The notes below the pieces were generated by a model, which saw only the letters and a list, made by a program, of their open reading frames with translations, was not told the DNA's origin and made no database searches. Shown here in pieces: positions 6,449 to 44,627 of a stretch of 64,000 nucleotides of DNA (positions within the stretch are counted from its first letter, which is position 1; the number at the start of each line of letters is the position of its first letter). This stretch comes from Anaeramoeba ignava BMAN (lineage: Eukaryota > Protista > Anaeramoebae). The translations under genes and the position numbers were made by a program. The stretch spans positions 124,001 through 188,000 of the forward strand of contig JAPDFW010000086.1 of NCBI GenBank assembly GCA_028826165.1. The letters run 5' to 3'.

Positions 6449-8199
6449 ATGTTTATTTTTGGTTCAAATAAAGAACCAAAAATTATCAAAAATCCACCAT
6501 TTATAGAAATAAAAAACCAACTCAATTTAAATTTGAAAATGAAAATGAAAATGAAAATGAAAAACAAATTAAACAAATTTCATCAGGTTTTTTCAACAAT
6601 TTTCCTTTTTGAAAATGGAAAGCAATAGAATATTTAAAAGAAAAAGATTCAAAATCAAAATCCTGAAAAATCCAAAATTGAAAATATTCAAAAAGTAACT
6701 GTTGGTTATGATAATGAAGCTATTTTAACAATAGAAGGAAATGTATTTGCTAAAGGAGAAGATATTAATCCAAAAAATCCAAATGAATTTATCAATATTT
6801 CATCATTAATTGAAGATACAAATGATAGAATAATTCAAGATATTGTTTCTGGAGCTTATTCAATTTACTTATTAACTTCAAATCAAAATCTTTATGGAAT
6901 TGGTTCAAATCATTATGGTCAACTTGGTTTTGATTCTGAAACACTTGAAAAAACAGAAAAACCAATTTTAATGATGAAAAATGTTTCTAAAATATTTTCA
7001 GGAAGTACTTCAATTCATGTTTTTCTTTTAAATTCAAATCAAGAATTATTTGGATGCGGATGGAGTGAACATGGTCAACTTGGATTAGGAGAATCAAGAA
7101 AAGAAATAAAAATACAAAAATTAACCAAAATCCAAAATATTCCAAAAGGCAAAATAATCGATATTCAATGTGGATATTTCATTCAATAATGTTGATTGAA
7201 AATCAAAATCAAAATCCAAAAAGAAAACTTTATTCATGTGGATATTGGATATATAATGGATTTGGCAAAGATGAAAATACTTATGAATTTACTGAAATCG
7301 AATCATCTTTATTTGAAAATGATGATATTCTTGATATTTCTGTTGGAAATAAGCATACTTTGATTTTAACTTCAAATTCAAAATTAATAGTATTTGGATA
7401 TAATTATTCTGGTCAATTAGGAACTGGAGATACAAAACATCAACTAATTCCAATTCAAATTGAACTTCCTAAATTAAGATTTAATGAAGATATTTCTAAT
7501 TATCATATTTCTTGTGGATATCGAAAATCATTTCTTTATTATTCTCCTTCTTTTTCTAATCTTGAAGAAGATTTGATAAAACTATTTAGAAGAAAAGAAT
7601 TTTGTGATATTTCATTTAAAACCAAAAATGGAGAAATAATCAAAGCTCATAAATTAATATTGAAATATAGATTAAATCAAAATGAAAATGAAATTGGAAA
7701 ACTTCAAGAAATTATTTCAACAAAATCAATTAAAGAATCTAATCAAATATTTGAAATGATTTATTCAAACAGAATAATAAATCCAAAATTATATTCTGAA
7801 ATTAAAGAAATTATAAATTCAAATGAAAAAATTGAAGAAACAATGAAAAGAATTTATTTAAATGAAAATGAAAATGAAAAAGATTTTATTATTGAAAGAA
7901 AAGAAAAACAATATAAATTTCCTAAATTAATATTAATAATGAGAAGTGAATTATATCGAGGAATGTTTTTATCTGTAACAAAAGATACTTCTAATAAAGT
8001 TACAGATTATAGTGAATTAAGTAATGAATCATTTCAAATATTTGAATATTGGATTTATTCAAATCAAATTAAAGATGAAATTCAAATTACACAAGAAATT
8101 ATTGATGAAATTGAAACAGGAATTGATTATTTTCAATTAAATCAAACAAATCCAAATTTATTTGATTTATTAATTAACAAATCTAATAATCAAAATTAA
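6449..8199 (+). pseudogene. RCC1-BTB copy B, several frameshifts (pseudogene or assembly errors)
   Basis: Near-identical to copy D, but with multiple homopolymer indels at 6450-6680 and one near 7175. Confidence 0.7.
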
Positions 8200-36684: not shown

Positions 36685-38380
36685 ATGAAAAATAAAAAGA
36701 AAAATAGAAAATCAAAACAAAAATCAATTAAATTTCCTTTTGGATTATCAAATCCTTCAAAAATAATCCCAAAATCAATTCCTTCTTTAAATCTTTATTC
36801 TGAATGGGTTTATGAAAAAAATCAATTATCATTTCTAAAATATCTTTTTGATTCCAAACAATTTATTGAAATTTTTGAAAAATATCCAAATCCAAAACTT
36901 CAAAGAAATTTAAGAAAATTAATCCAAATAGGAACAATTCAAACTTGTTTATCAAGTCGTTATTATTTATCAAATGGAGAAGTTGTACATTTGAATAAAA
37001 AAAAACTTGAAAATGAAACTAAATCAACAATTTTCTACACAAAAGATCATTCATTTTCTTTTAAAAAACCAGATTCTTCTTTAAAAACCAAGTTTTTTGT
37101 TATTGAAGGTGATTGTTTGGAAACTGCTTTTTTATTCAAAAATACAACAGATTTAAAAACTGCTGTCTTAGTTATGGCTTCAAGATCAAATCCAGGTCTG
37201 AAAAAAAAGAAGAAGAAGAAAAAAAAATTTTTTTGTTCCACTTTTTTTAATTCTCTTTTTTTTTTTGCTTTTCAAAAAATTATTATTATTTTATTATTTT
37301 TATTTTTTTATTATTATTATTTTTATTATTATTAGGTGGAGGTTATTTAAAAGGTGCTTCAGGTCAAGGTATTTAAAAAAATATAATTAAAAAATTTCTC
37401 AATAATTTTATTAAAAAAATACTTTTTATTATTTTTATTAGAAGGTAAATTTGTTTTTTGATTGAAAATTTTTTTATTGAAATTTTTTCATTTAAATAAA
37501 AAATAAAAAGAAAATTTACACAGAAGAACAAATCTTTTTCAATGTACAGATGATCCTTATCAAATTAATCCAAGTAAAAAATGGGATTATCCACTTCCAG
37601 AAAAAGGTGAAAAATTAAAAATAAAAAATTAAATAAAAAATTAAATAAAAAATTAATTTAGGAGGTTTATATTGTAATGAAGTAACATGTTTCAGAAAAG
37701 GAGAAGAAGAAGGTTATCAATTTTATGAATCACCTCAAACAATGAATTTTATTTTTGTTTATGGTATTCAATTTTTAAATGATATTTTTATCTAATCAAA
37801 AAAATCAATTAATTTTTTTTTTCAATTTTTCAGCTTATCAAGACCCTCCTTTGAGTTTTCCAGAAAAAGGAGAACCAAGAATTACTGGAGGAATTGTTAA
37901 ACATATAAAAGAGAAAATTGGATATATTATTGATATTGCAAAAGAAAACGGTAAAAAATTGAAAAATATAAAAAAATATTTTGTTCCACTTTTTTTTATC
38001 AATTATTTTTTCAATTATTTATTATTAATTATTTTTCCAATTATTTTTTCACAATTTTGGTTCATAAAGAAATTAAGTGTTTAATTTTATCAGCATGGGG
38101 ATGCGGAATTTATAAAAATCCTCCAAAACATATTGCGGAAATGTTTAAAGAAATACTTTTTTTAGAAAAGAATCAAAATTTTTTTGAAATTGTTTGTTTT
38201 GCCATTTTGGAAAAAAAACCATTTTCTCTTCATAATCCAAATGGAAGTTTACAACCTTTTTCACAAATTTTTGGAATAGAGAAAATTTCCTTTTTAAATC
38301 TAAAAGAAAAATTAACTGAAAAAGAAAAAGAAGAAGAAAAACAAGAAATCAAAATTGAAAATAATTTAAAAGAAAAATGA
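36685..38380 (+). CDS. Microbial-type PARG / TIGR02452-like macrodomain protein, 7 exons including a 3-nt microexon
   Basis: Exons 36685-37195, 37336-37368, 37442-37444, 37511-37606, 37662-37763, 37834-37950, 38070-38380 give MASRSNPGGGYLKGASGQEENLHRRT and LILSAWGCGIYKNPP. Confidence 0.85.
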
Positions 38381-38581: not shown

Positions 38582-41500
38582 ATGTCTTTATTTCATTTAC
38601 TTTTAAACCATGATTACGAAAAACTTAAAAAAAATCTTCTTGGAAAATCTAGAGCAAAGAAAGTTAACAAAACAACAGTAAATTTTTTTTTATTTTTAAT
38701 TAACTAAATAAAAAAAATTTTTTAAAAAAAAAAAAACTAAACTTATTAAATTTTTATTTACTTTTTTTTTTTTTTAATTTCCTTTTTTTTTTTATTAATT
38801 TCAAACAAAGTCTGTAAGTTTTACTTTCTTACTTTTTTTATTTAAAATTAAAATTCATTTATAAAATTAAAATTAAAATTAAAATTAAAATTAAAATTAA
38901 AATTAAAATTAAAATTAAAATTAAAATTAAAATTAAAATTAAAATTAAAATTAAAATTAAAATTAAAATTAAAATTAAAATTCATTTATAAAATTAAAAT
39001 TAAAATTAAAATTAATATTCATTTATAAAATTAAAATTAAAATTCATATTAAAATTAAAATTAATATTAAAATTAAAATTAAAATTAAAATTAAAATTAA
39101 GGTAAGATCTTCAAAATCCTAATTTAGGAGATTTTGCCTAATTTTAAATTAAATAAGAAAAAAATAAGAAAAACACAATAAAAAAATCTAATTCAAAAAA
39201 TCCTAATTTCTCCTAATATTTTTTTTTTGACACCATTTTCCCATTGAGTCCTTAAGAAAAAACTCCTAATTTTTTTCAATAAGAAATTAGGAATTTTTGA
39301 ATATTTTTTTTTCAACAAATTTTTTTTTAACATGAAAAATTTTACAAAAATAATAACAAAATTAGGAATTCCTAATTTTCGGAATTTTCAAGATGATAAT
39401 TTCTTTTATTTTGATTTTTGATAATAAAATGCGATTTTTTCAATTATCACATGTTTGGTGTCTTGAAAATTAAAACTTACCTGACAACTTTTTAGAATTT
39501 TCCTTAAGTCGGAAGATTATATTTCCAAATTTCTTGTGGTTGGGCTTTCTTCATAATATTGTTCAAATCAAGAGGATCTAAATTTTTCTTTTGAGAAATT
39601 CTGGGTTTGGATTAATGATTTTTGAAGAGAATTGCGTTTTTGATAGTGATAATCCAAAAATTCAATTCCTCTTTTTGAATGATTTTTCATCAAAAAAAGA
39701 ATAAAAAATTTTTTTTAGTTTTTATTTTGCTGATTAGAAGTATGAAAGAGTTGATCAAGTTTATGTCAACTTAGTAGTTTTTTTCTGCAAAATAGACAAA
39801 TTTATGAAAAAGATTCAGTAAAAAAAATAGTTTTCTTGTTTAGTTTTGTAGTCTCAGGAATGGGTTTGGGGAATTTATTCCATGAAAAAAAGAATTTAGG
39901 AAAAATTAGGATTTCTTGTTTCAAAATTTTCGATTGTCATTGTCATTTTCAAAATAAATCAATAAAAAATTAGGCAAAAAACCCTAAATTAGGCAAAATC
40001 TCCTAAATTAGGATTTTGAAGATCTTACCAAAATTAAAATTAAAATTAAAATTAAAATTAAAATTCATTTATTAAATTAAAATTAAAATTAAAATTAAAA
40101 TTAAAATTAAAATTTTTTTAATTAAATTAGGATGTAAGTTGTGCAAAAATGAAAAAAAAAAACTCTTTTCTTTTTTATTTTGAATTTTGCAATTATTTAA
40201 AATAAAATATTTTTTTTTTAAATTTTAGGGAAATACACTCCTTCATTTAGCTTGTCAAAAAACAAGTCACAGAGATATAATTCCAGTTCTTCTTGATGCA
40301 GGTGCAAATCCAAATGCTCAAAATGTATTTAAAATTAAAAAAAATTTATTTAAAAAATTATATTTAAAAAATTATATTGATTTTTTAATTAGGATGTTTG
40401 TTTTAAATATATTTTCTATTTTTCTTCTGATTTAATCTCTTTTTTTTTTTATTATTAAAAAAAAATAGGCTGTTAGAAATCTATTCTTTTTTTTTTTTTT
40501 TTTTTTAATTTTTAAAATTAATTTGTTTTGATTTTTAAAAAAAAGAAAATGACACCTTTACATTTTGCTTGTTATTCAAAAATGTCAGTTAGTGTTGTTC
40601 AAAACATTATTTCTCAAGGAGGAAATCTTACTTTAAAAGATGTAAATATTAAAAAAAAAATAAGAAAAATTAAAGTGATCATTTTATTAATAAAATTTTT
40701 TTTTAGAAAGTAAAAAAATTAATTGAAAAGTTTAAATTGAAATTTTTAATTAAAATTTGATTTTTAGGATGTAATTTTTTTGATTTATAAAAAAACAACT
40801 TCATTTCAATAATAATTATTAAGGTTCTTATTTATAACTTAATTCATCTTTCTTTTATCTATTAAAATATATTCAGGGAAACTCACCTTTACATTATGCT
40901 TGCATTAATATGCCAAGAACCCAAACTGTAAATTTTTACATTTCTTTTTTTTTTTAATAAAAAATTTTATTGAAATTGAAATAAAAATCTTTTCAAATTC
41001 AAAAATAAAAGCCTTTAGGAGATATTGGAATGTTTGATTCTCCAAATCGAGATTTAATAAATGCTTTAATTTCAGCAAAAGCTCCTGTTAATGATCAAAA
41101 TGTATTAAATTAAACAAAATTATTTTTATTTGAAAAAATTTTTTATTTAATAAAATAATTTTTTTGATAGAGTGTAATTATTATTTATTTTTTCAATAAA
41201 TTTATTATTTGGATTAATTTTATTAAAATTCTTTTAGGATGTAAAAAAAAATAATTGAAGAATTTTTTAATGAAAATTTTATTTTTTAAATTTTAAATTT
41301 TAAATTAAATTTTAAAGGGAAATACTCCTTTAATTCTCCTCATTTTGAATCATGCTCTTTGTGAAGTTATTCAAGTTTTATTAGATAATAAAGCAGATGC
41401 AAATCTTCAAAATGTTTGACAAAAAAAAAAGATTTAATTAATTAATTAATTAATTAAATTTATTTATTTATTTATAATATATAAAAAAAAAGAATGTAAA

Positions 41501-44500
41501 ATTTAAAATTGAAAAATTTCATTTTCTTTTTGATTTAAAAAATGAATATTATATTTTAAATTTAAATAGAGAGTAAAAAAAAATTATTATTATTATTATT
41601 TTTTTTAAAAGAAAAAAGAAAATATTGAATTAAATTTTTTTTATTTTCAAATGATAGAAATTTTCACCTTTACATTATGCTTGCAAAAAGCCAATTAATA
41701 AATCACTTATAGATGCACTTTTAAAAGCAGGAGCAAATCCCAATTTAAAAGATGTAAATATTCATTTTGGAAAAATCAACAATATTTTTTTTTTGATAAA
41801 TATTTAATAAAACAAAATTTTTAGAAAGTAAAAAATTATTCTTTTTAAATTTAATTTTATTTTTAATTTAAAAATGAATTTATTCATTTTAATTTTTTAA
41901 ATAGTTTGATTCAGCACCATTTCATGATTTTTGTGGAGTAGATAATGATTTTGAAATAATCCAAAAATTTATTGAAGCTGGAGCTAATGTTAATATTCAA
42001 AATGTATTTAAATTTCCTTTTCTTTTTTTTTATTTTTTATTAAATTAATTTTATAAATAAAAATAGAAAGTAAAAATTTTGAAATTTAAGAAAAAATTTT
42101 TTTTAAAATTAATTAAAATTAATGAATTATTTTTGATTTAGAATGTATTTTTTTTTTAATTCAATAAATAAATAAATATTTATTTTTAAAATTATTATAG
42201 AATGAAACACCTCTTCATTTAGTTTGCAAACGTAAACCTTCTGTTGAACTTATAAAACTTTTTTACGTTAATAAATTTAATAATCAGCTAACTGATGTAA
42301 AAAAAAATAATTTAAAAAACAAAATTTGAAAAATATAAATTAATTTAAATTTAAAATAATTTTAGAAAGTAAAAAAATTTTTTTTAATTAAAGAATTGAA
42401 AGAAAAAAAATGAAAAATTATTAAAATTTAAATTTAAATTTATTAGAATGTAAAAATTTTTTTTAATTTATTTTTTAATATATATTTTTTAATATATTTT
42501 TTTAATATATTTTTTAATATATTTTTTAATTTATTTTTTAATTTATTTTTTTAATATATTTTTTTAATATAAATAGTCTGATACACCTTTACATATTGCT
42601 TGTAAATATCGAGCAAGTCCAGAAGCTATTCGAGCTCTTCTTGATCATGGAGCAAATATTAATGCAGAAGATGTAAAAATTTATTAAATTGAAAATTAAT
42701 AAAAATTTAAATTGAAAATTAATAAAAATTTAAATTGAAAATTTATTAAATTGAAAAATTTTTTATTAAATTAAAAAATTAGGTTGTAAGTATTTCAATA
42801 AAAATAAATTTATTTAAAAATATTAAATTGATTTTCAAATGAAAAGAATGTAAAAAAATTTTTTTTGATTTGAAATGAAAAAAAAAATTGAGTTAATAAA
42901 TTTTAATATTTAAAATAATAGCAACATACCGCTCTTCATGTTGCATGTATGTGCCAAGCTTCTAAAGAAGTAGTTGAATTATTATTACAAACTGATGCAA
43001 TTGTTAATGGAGTTGATGTAAAAAAATTATTTAAATTTAAAAAAGAAAATTTAAATTTAAATTTAAATTTTAAATATTTTCTTTTTTTAGTTGGTAAAAA
43101 ATATATTTGAAGATGAATAATTTAAAATTATTTAAAAATTTGTTTTTATTTATAGAATGTAAAATATAAACAAAAAAAATTTTAAATATTTTTATTTAAA
43201 TATTTTATTTATTTATTAATAAATTAATTTTTTAGGAAAATACACCACTTCATTATGCAGCAAGATTTAAAATGGATATTGAACCAATTAAAGTACTTAT
43301 AGATTATGGAGCAGATATTTATTTTAAAAATGTAATTGAAAAAAATGAAAAATTAAACTTAAAATAATATTAAATCAAAAATAAAATAGAAAGTAAAATT
43401 TTATTATTTTTAAATTTAAAATTAAAAAATTAAAATTATTTTTTTTTAGGATGTAAATTTAATTTTAAATTTAATTTTTAAAAAAAAAAATATTCAATCT
43501 ATAAAATAAATCTTTTACAGGGAAAAACACCATATGATTTTGCAAATGAAGACTTGCAAAAAGTATTTAAAGATTATCCAAAACAACGGGAAAATTTATT
43601 ACGAACACAAATCTCAACATTACAAAGAAACGAACAGAAAGTAAAAGAGCAATCAGAAAAGCTTAAAAAATTAGAATTACAACTAGCAAAAAAGGAGCAA
43701 GAATTGCATGAGCAAAACGAGAAGATCAAGAGTTTCAAACAAACAATCCCAACAAAAGCTTTATCAATTACGGAACTCGATTTTGATGGGGATTCACCAT
43801 TGATCCCCAAAAGAGAAAGCCATATGGGAATAACAGACATAGATATGGACGATGTTGAGATTGTAAAGTTTGTGGCAAAAGGAAGTTTCAAAGAAGTGCA
43901 TAAGGGAGTATGGTTAGGACTTGATGTGGCGGTTATGAAACTCTTATCCGGAGCAAATATGACTGAAGCCGAACGCGCTGATTTTGAAAACGAACTCTCG
44001 ATGCTCAGCAATCTTAGACATCCAAATATCGTACAATTTTTAGGCGCTAGTTTGGACCCAAAGAATATGTGCATAATTGTTGAGTTTTGTGATCGTGGAG
44101 ACTTACACAGTTATCTCATGTCAAAAGCTGTCATCAATGACGAAACTAAATTGGAACTTGCTTTAGATATTACAAAAGGAATTTATTTTCTTCATTCAAA
44201 CAAAATTGTTCATCGTGATTTGAAGTCTCCAAATATCTTACTCAACCATAAAGGTGTTGCTAAGATCACCGATTTTGGAATGTCAAAAGCAGTGACAACT
44301 TCAAATCCTAATTTGAATACTTTTGTCGGAACTTTTAATTGGATGGCTCCAGAAATCATGTATGGAGAACCCTATTCCTTTGCGGCAGATATTTATGCCT
44401 TGGGAATTATCCTTTGGGAAATTGATAATAGAAAAATCCCTTTTGATGGTCTCTCTTTTGCTCAGTTAACAATGAAAGTAGCCATTCAAGGTGAAAGACC

Positions 44501-44627
44501 TCCTTTAAATCCAAACGGTATTTTTAACGATATTATTCCTGATTGTTGGAAAAGAGATCCTTCCGAAAGATTAAATATCAAGCAGGTTTATACAAAATTA
44601 AAAGCAATTGATCTTAAGAAAAAATGA
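38582..44627 (+). CDS. Ankyrin-repeat (10 full repeats + caps) / coiled-coil / TKL protein kinase, ~757 aa, 34 exons
   Basis: Large exons 38582-38677, 40229-40324, 40546-40641, 40877-40927, 41012-41101, 41318-41413, 41658-41753, 41905-42003, 42201-42296, 42577-42672, 42922-43017, 43236-43331, 43521-44627, plus 21 three-nt exons. TPLH ankyrin motifs; kinase motifs HRDLKSPN, DFG, GTFNWMAPE. Confidence 0.88.
38811..43452 (+). other. Array of 21 single-codon (3-nt) microexons
   Basis: AG-NNN-GT at 38811, 40131, 40393, 40469, 40707, 40768, 41171, 41238, 41493, 41570, 41825, 42067, 42142, 42366, 42447, 42783, 42847, 43091, 43156, 43390, 43450. Confidence 0.85.
39101..40029. mobile_element. Non-autonomous DNA transposon (MITE-like, possibly Merlin/IS1016-type), 929 bp
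   Basis: Perfect 44-bp TIRs (GGTAAGATCTTCAAAATCCTAATTTAGGAGATTTTGCCTAATTT). Flanks are compatible with an AAAATTAA TSD. Subterminal CCTAATT/AATTAGG repeats, no long ORF. Confidence 0.85.

What the first reader, a model, noticed from the sequence alone, without database searches (positions are those of the whole stretch)
38582..43553. Ankyrin-repeat kinase built with 21 single-codon microexons, paired at every repeat junction
Seen in sequence: each ankyrin repeat is typically one 96-nt (32-codon) exon. Between consecutive repeats lie three short AT-rich introns (56-133 nt; one is 1317 nt because of a transposon) separated by two AG-NNN-GT 3-nt exons. Junction readings: TT[S][D]GNT, QN[D][A]KMT, KD[K][D]GNS, QN[S][D]GNT, QN[N][R]KFS, KD[K]FDSA, QN[K][N]NET, TD[K][N]SDT, ED[V][N]QHT, VD[L][N]ENT, KN[K][D]GKT. 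All 33 introns are phase 0 and no microexon is a stop. Slot 1 is Lys in 5/11 and slot 2 is Asp/Asn in 8/10, matching the established ankyrin hairpin consensus D/N-K-D/N-G-x-TPLH. G is rare in these introns, so 21 regularly placed AG-NNN-GT sites are unlikely by chance. Inference: the spliceosome routinely handles back-to-back 3-nt exons, probably by intron definition or ordered splicing. I know of no described gene with this periodic double-microexon architecture, and gene predictors would miss it.
Basis: partly seen in the sequence, partly recalled or inferred. Interest (0 to 1): 0.95.

Follow-up and report, generated by a model that had tools for sequence, protein, structure and literature searches.

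The report
One-codon exons at ankyrin hairpin tips
In the anaerobic amoeba Anaeramoeba ignava, an ankyrin-kinase gene writes the two loop-tip amino acids of each ankyrin repeat as separate three-base exons; transcript-derived proteins carry those residues, the public gene model drops all 21, and a similar trick was so far reported mainly from truffle ankyrin genes.

Summary
Real, and supported by transcript-derived sequences. The gene (A. ignava, deposited as KAJ5071666.1, 736 aa) has 21 AG-NNN-GT exons at 11 repeat junctions, 33 phase-0 introns, 757 aa with them; shuffles give 1.2 such sites. The deposited model equals this model minus all 21. A transcriptome ORF (EukProt P006743, chimeric) carries this gene's first four microexon residues; transcriptome ORFs of sister genes carry 22/22, 20 of 21 mapped, and 6/6. 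They fill positions 2-3 of the D-x-x-G hairpin and restore canonical spacing. Likely mechanism: plain intron definition; the acceptor is the first AG at least 55 nt past the donor (106/109 introns). No sign of skipping. The genome holds over 1,000 strict one-codon sites (about 5,000 extrapolated), some in runs of 8-10; similar runs occur in fungal-looking metagenome contigs. The scan noted this layout before in other ankyrin genes of this genome.

The parts
38582..44627 (+). Ankyrin-repeat + coiled-coil + TKL-type protein kinase gene, 34 exons, 757 aa
   Evidence: deposited form KAJ5071666.1
38811..40133 (+). Junction 1: 3-nt exons 38811-13 (Ser) and 40131-33 (Asp)
   Evidence: in transcript-derived P0158
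39101..40029 (.). 929-nt non-autonomous element, 44-nt perfect terminal inverted repeats, probable 8-bp target duplication, inside intron 2
   Evidence: 99% identical copy on contig C114
40393..40471 (+). Junction 2: 40393-95 (Asp), 40469-71 (Ala)
   Evidence: in transcript-derived P0158
40707..40770 (+). Junction 3: 40707-09 (Lys), 40768-70 (Asp)
   Evidence: sequence; same pair spliced in paralog P0151
40877..41101 (+). Repeat 3, split 51+90 nt by an ordinary intron within an insertion
   Evidence: same split in paralogs
41171..41240 (+). Junction 4: 41171-73 (Ser), 41238-40 (Asp)
41493..41572 (+). Junction 5: 41493-95 (Asn), 41570-72 (Arg)
41825..42003 (+). Junction 6: single 3-nt exon 41825-27 (Lys); next exon 41905-42003 is one codon longer
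   Evidence: same state at junction 6 of paralog on C72
42067..42144 (+). Junction 7: 42067-69 (Lys), 42142-44 (Asn)
42366..42449 (+). Junction 8: 42366-68 (Lys), 42447-49 (Asn)
42783..42849 (+). Junction 9: 42783-85 (Val), 42847-49 (Asn)
43091..43158 (+). Junction 10: 43091-93 (Leu), 43156-58 (Asn)
   Evidence: sequence; same pair spliced in paralog P0151
43390..43452 (+). Junction 11: 43390-92 (Lys), 43450-52 (Asp); the intron after it matches the only intron of A. flamelloides relatives
43521..44627 (+). Last exon: capping half-repeat, coiled coil, kinase domain with HRD, DFG and APE motifs, stop

Best explanation
An ordinary ankyrin-repeat TKL kinase whose mRNA is assembled from 34 exons, 21 of them single codons that are included as a rule. 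They supply hairpin positions 2 and 3 of each repeat, so the folded protein is a normal ankyrin stack. Splicing needs no exon recognition: each short, G-poor intron is defined on its own, a GT(A/T) donor pairing with the first AG at least about 55 nt downstream, so exon size hardly matters and skipping is rare. Shown: sites, inclusion of 4 here and about 48 in sister genes, spacing, the first-AG regularity. Inferred: that the other 17 are included, that the regularity reflects the spliceosome's rule, the order of intron removal. Origin (inferred, about 0.4): an old phase-0 intron before the hairpin Gly, then stepwise gain of introns one and two codons upstream, perhaps by duplication of an intron-plus-codon unit with loss of a codon beside it, spread by repeat and gene duplication.
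For: P0158 residues 1-77 map to the window with 0 mismatches through four 3-nt exons. P0152 maps to L013 with 34 introns, 22 three-nt exons, 0 mismatches; P0151 is 21 aa longer than the genome model P0013, exactly at the junctions. Six more on C101. Distance from the conserved Asn to the TPLH Thr is 8 in 392 of 432 repeats of other ankyrin proteins, 8 in transcript ORFs, 6 in the deposited model; Pfam Ank_4 169 vs 129 bits and Ank_5 134 vs 96 bits with vs without. First-AG rule right in 106/109 introns; AGs at least 55 nt from the donor: 1 seen, 40 expected. Genome-wide 0 of 255 pairs start with TAA/TGA. Intermediate states: one intron in A. flamelloides, single 3-nt exon per repeat on C10, junction 6.
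Against: Only 4 of the 21 have direct transcript support, from a chimeric contig. Assembled ORFs show the majority form and hide minor skipping. That EukProt entries come from RNA assemblies rests on their Trinity/TransDecoder-style names and my knowledge. The rule fails for the two long introns and one NAGNAG-like site. One Gln in P0151 has no 3-nt exon in the assembly.
Confidence: 0.8

Rival explanations
1. A diversification device as reported for truffle nank genes: the one-codon exons are skipped in a regulated or stochastic way, changing the binding hairpins; ten pairs and one single allow about 2 million in-frame forms.
For: All introns phase 0, so any skip keeps the frame. Positions 2-3 are the ones randomised in designed ankyrin binders (PMC4308713). 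Precedent in truffle. Runs of such exons follow NACHT or ankyrin ORFs in fungal-looking contigs.
Against: All four transcript ORFs include every exon. Skipping deletes residues rather than swapping them, and spacing 6 occurred in none of 432 outside repeats, 7 in seven. No mutually exclusive spare exons at any junction. A 3-nt exon in the neighbouring gene completes the PARG-type QEE motif, where skipping would be plainly harmful.
Confidence: 0.15
2. The deposited 736-aa form is the main product or this copy is poorly spliced (for instance because of the element in intron 2), and most of the 21 sites are relics.
For: No full-length transcript ORF of this gene in the protein collection; the element brings many AG/GT sites.
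Against: The Ser-Asp join across the element-bearing intron is present in P0158; all 21 sites intact, none a stop; every deposited paralog model drops them too although transcripts include them, which points to the predictor.
Confidence: 0.04
3. Chance AG-NNN-GT matches in AT-rich introns.
For: None beyond the shortness of the motif.
Against: 21 vs 1.24 shuffled; k=3 only; 255 vs 2 pairs and 1152 vs 62 singles genome-wide for 3 vs 4 nt; transcript ORFs.
Confidence: 0.01

Closest known systems
[quoted passage not shown] 2012, seen only through PMC4986451 and PMC13449251)
   Same: Ankyrin-repeat genes, tens of one-codon exons, expanded family.
   Different: No NACHT domain here (kinase or BTB instead); a metamonad, not a fungus, so presumably independent; truffle exons are reported as alternatively spliced, here only full inclusion is seen; positions in the truffle repeats not checked.
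Schistosome micro-exon genes, MEGs (PMC4015677)
   Same: Runs of symmetric small exons, frame kept on skipping.
   Different: MEGs are small secreted proteins with up to 75% of coding sequence in microexons and proven skipping; here 63 of 2271 coding bases, in a folded intracellular repeat protein.
Isolated conserved microexons of plants and animals, e.g. 9-nt AP2 and invertase exons, 1-nt APC11 exon, 3-nt cytohesin exon (PMC8831610, PMC6314551)
   Same: Tiny exons inside conserved motifs, missed by annotation.
   Different: One or two per gene and, in animals, helped by SRRM3/4; here 21 per gene, periodic, back to back, with no visible enhancer or branch motif.
Ankyrin-repeat TKL kinases of Anaeramoeba (TNNI3K-like by automatic name)
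   Same: Domain order; 41-60% identity in the last exon.
   Different: A. flamelloides relatives found have one intron and no microexons.

Membership tests
Spliceosomal microexons | Flanked by GT-AG introns | tested here: met
   33/33 introns GT-AG
Spliceosomal microexons | Present in mature mRNA | tested here: met
   4 of 21 directly, about 48 in sister genes, through transcriptome ORFs; 17 not directly tested
Ankyrin repeat + protein kinase | Pfam Ank and Pkinase above cut-off; canonical hairpin spacing | tested here: met
   on the deposited protein; spacing 8 with microexons
Truffle nank-type system | NACHT domain (NLR architecture) | tested here: not met
   no NACHT among Pfam hits
Truffle nank-type system | Many codon-sized exons in an ankyrin gene | tested here: met
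   21 here, 20-22 in paralogs
Truffle nank-type system | Alternative splicing of those exons | tested here: inconclusive
Truffle nank-type system | Same positions within the repeat | not testable with these tools
   original paper not held; no truffle locus obtained
Schistosome MEGs | Microexons make up most of the coding sequence; secreted product | tested here: not met
   2.8% of coding bases; ankyrin-kinase architecture
Schistosome MEGs | Symmetric exons | tested here: met
   all phase 0

The most novel reading that the evidence does not exclude
A. ignava, and independently fungi, use one-codon exons as a splicing-based system to vary recognition surfaces (ankyrin hairpin tips, tails of NLR-like proteins), generated by a still active process that copies an intron together with one codon; in the amoeba this could serve control of its bacterial symbionts or prey.
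Probability: 0.15. Interest if true: 0.92.

Novelty: new variant of a known kind. Interest (0 to 1): 0.76.

Why it matters
It shows a spliceosome routinely joining back-to-back 3-nt exons, a natural extreme for testing intron definition, order of splicing and the smallest workable exon. It gives a graded series (one, two, three introns at neighbouring codon boundaries; long runs with near-identical introns) on which a mechanism of intron gain can be tested. It means the public A. ignava proteome is systematically wrong at perhaps thousands of sites, including a catalytic motif next door. And it suggests that ankyrin genes reached codon-sized exons twice, in truffles and in a metamonad.

Tried and rejected
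No full-length transcript ORF of this gene was found. No branch-point or pyrimidine-tract signal in 107 introns. Introns of this gene are not similar to each other, so no recent unit copying here. The reversed-pattern control (109) is unfair because the reversed pattern reads as in-frame codons; the 4-nt control was used. Many metagenome hits are simple repeats full of stop triplets and were rejected. Papers on Anaeramoeba found here do not treat microexons. Two originals (Iotti 2012, DeMarco 2010) were not held. No contig taken for human was met.

Full report
1. Observation. Larger exons: 38582-38677, 40229-40324, 40546-40641, 40877-40927, 41012-41101, 41318-41413, 41658-41753, 41905-42003, 42201-42296, 42577-42672, 42922-43017, 43236-43331, 43521-44627. 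With the 21 triplets the model has 33 GT-AG introns, all phase 0, and gives 757 aa without a stop. Shuffling the 11 junction regions gives 1.24 sites on average and at most 6 in 2000 trials.

2. Identity. The last exon is identical to the end of KAJ5071666.1 of Anaeramoeba ignava, 736 aa. That deposited protein is exactly my model without the 21 triplets. Pfam finds ankyrin repeats and a protein kinase. The genome's very AT-rich introns are documented (PMC11550330).

3. Transcript evidence. The protein collection holds EukProt entries whose names are those of transcriptome assemblies (that they are RNA-derived is my reading of the names). P0158 (EP01156 P006743) starts with this gene's first 77 residues, including Ser-Asp at junction 1 and Asp-Ala at junction 2, and maps to the window with no mismatch through four 3-nt exons, across the 1317-nt intron. 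After TPLHFAC it continues in an ankyrin-BTB gene on contig C101, most likely an assembly chimera; that part maps through six more 3-nt exons and one of 12 nt. For two close paralogs: P0152 maps with 34 introns, 22 three-nt exons and no mismatch; P0151 is 21 residues longer than its deposited model P0013, and 20 of these map to 3-nt exons. The 21st, a Gln, has no exon in the assembly, where a 171-nt intron with a simple repeat sits; an assembly error or another allele is likely but not shown. So inclusion is shown for 4 of 21 here and about 48 elsewhere; the other 17 are inferred by homology.

4. What the residues do. They occupy positions 2 and 3 of the consensus DxxGxTPLH, the hairpin positions randomised in designed ankyrin binders (PMC4308713). 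The spacing from the conserved Asn to the Thr of TPLH is 8 in 392 of 432 repeats of other proteins, never 6; it is 8 in the transcript ORFs and 6 in the deposited models. Multi-repeat Pfam models score about 40 bits higher with the residues. Their spectrum (Lys, Asn, Ser, Asp; Asp, Asn, Tyr) resembles ordinary hairpins.

5. How it is spliced. In 107 short introns of four genes the lengths are 56-133 nt whatever the flanking exons, donors are GTA or GTT, and no branch or pyrimidine signal stands out. Internal AGs are common within 55 nt of the donor (95) and almost absent beyond it (1; 40 expected), and 'first AG at least 55 nt after the donor' names the right acceptor in 106 of 109 introns. 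The simplest reading (inferred) is intron definition by distance: each intron is recognised alone, and once the upstream one is gone the triplet is just the end of a long 5' exon. The exceptions are the two long introns and one tandem acceptor. Intron 2 carries a 929-nt element with 44-nt perfect inverted ends and a 99% identical copy elsewhere; its left end creates an AG directly followed by a donor, and its ends could pair and loop it out; neither is tested.

6. Extent. Four close paralogs and a more distant kinase on C10 show the same excess of 3-nt sites; the C10 gene has one triplet per 33-residue repeat. Many other ankyrin genes of the genome are long open frames without such introns. 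Genome-wide, a paired pattern gives 255 hits for 3 nt and 2 for 4 nt, a single pattern 1152 and 62, a triple pattern 301. None of the 255 pairs begins with TAA or TGA (roughly 25 expected from intron composition, my estimate; TAG not tested). The single pattern catches 15 of 68 known cases, so about 5,000 sites is a rough extrapolation. On C1 there are runs of 8-10 or more triplets separated by nearly identical spacers; they are not verified as spliced. The neighbouring PARG-like gene has a phase-1 triplet that completes its QEE motif, so the habit is not confined to ankyrins or to phase 0.

7. Other organisms. Two A. flamelloides ankyrin-kinases have a single phase-0 intron just before the Gly of the last hairpin, the place of the third intron of junction 11 here, and no microexons. 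Two genes do not settle the species. A metagenome scan returned at least 120 contigs; many are simple repeats, but about a dozen carry 10-34 stop-free triplets with regular 60-80 nt spacers, often with CTRAY branch motifs, some following a NACHT frame (L072) or ankyrin frames (L050, L063). They look fungal; source and splicing are unverified.

8. Origin (inferred). States with intron 3 only, introns 2+3, introns 1+2 and all three suggest stepwise change at neighbouring codon boundaries. Duplicating an intron with its adjacent codon makes a one-codon exon in one step and fits the near-identical spacers of the long runs; in hairpins a codon must then be lost nearby. The introns of this gene are no longer alike, so this is old or wrong here. 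Loss in A. flamelloides is not excluded.

9. Comparison and verdict. This gene works like it in structure but is not a member (no NACHT), and skipping is not seen. Schistosome MEGs and isolated plant microexons are further off. I found no paper on microexons in Anaeramoeba, within the limits of the library. The scan had noted the same layout in other ankyrin genes of this genome; those notes are not counted as support. New variant of a known kind; interest 0.76.

10. Limits. The joined model was not searched.

Noticed in passing
window 36685-37560 +: PARG-like gene (Pfam PARG_cat_microb) with a phase-1 3-nt exon at 37442-37444 that completes the GGG..GxQEE catalytic motif.
   Followed up: partly
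window 39101-40029: Recent MITE-like element in intron 2; left end forms an AG immediately followed by a strong donor, a possible recursive splice site.
   Followed up: partly
G000 C1 409302-413130 and 1057916-1073015, minus strand: Long runs of 3-nt units with near-identical spacers and varying sense codons; genes possibly spelled one codon per exon.
   Followed up: no
G000 C60 118862-119263, C2 7159-9120, C61 332-335 kb and 392-395 kb, C67 397-403 kb, C20 71-75 kb: Further chains of three to seven or more consecutive 3-nt units with unrelated spacers.
   Followed up: no
L011 (C72 paralog), last ankyrin junction: Transcript ORF P0151 has Gln-Asp, the assembly shows only the Asp exon; 171-nt intron with a simple repeat and no AG-NNN-GT. 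Assembly error, allele or unusual splice.
   Followed up: partly
L016 (C10) 7830-8068: Four consecutive 3-nt units (Phe, Asn, Gly, Lys) at the end of an ankyrin stack that otherwise has one per repeat.
   Followed up: no
L013 4551-5079: 526-nt first intron made largely of a hexamer repeat, followed by a Lys exon with an atypical GTG donor, still included in the transcript ORF.
   Followed up: partly
L037, L050, L052, L056, L028, L063, L071, L072, L084, L047, L086, L094: Metagenome contigs, fungal-looking, with 7-34 stop-free one-codon units; L072 after a NACHT frame, L050 and L063 after ankyrin frames, L056 after a GTPase-like frame.
   Followed up: partly
P0158 (EukProt P006743): Chimeric ORF joining this gene's first 77 residues to an ankyrin-BTB gene on C101 at a shared TPLHFAC stretch; probably an assembly artefact.
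   Followed up: partly
P0153, P0301 (deposited A. ignava models): Contain short stretches that look like read-through of introns at junctions, another way the predictor mishandles these sites.
   Followed up: no
G000, many contigs: A large second class of ankyrin genes with open frames over 1,000 codons and no such introns; relation to the intron-rich class not studied.
   Followed up: no
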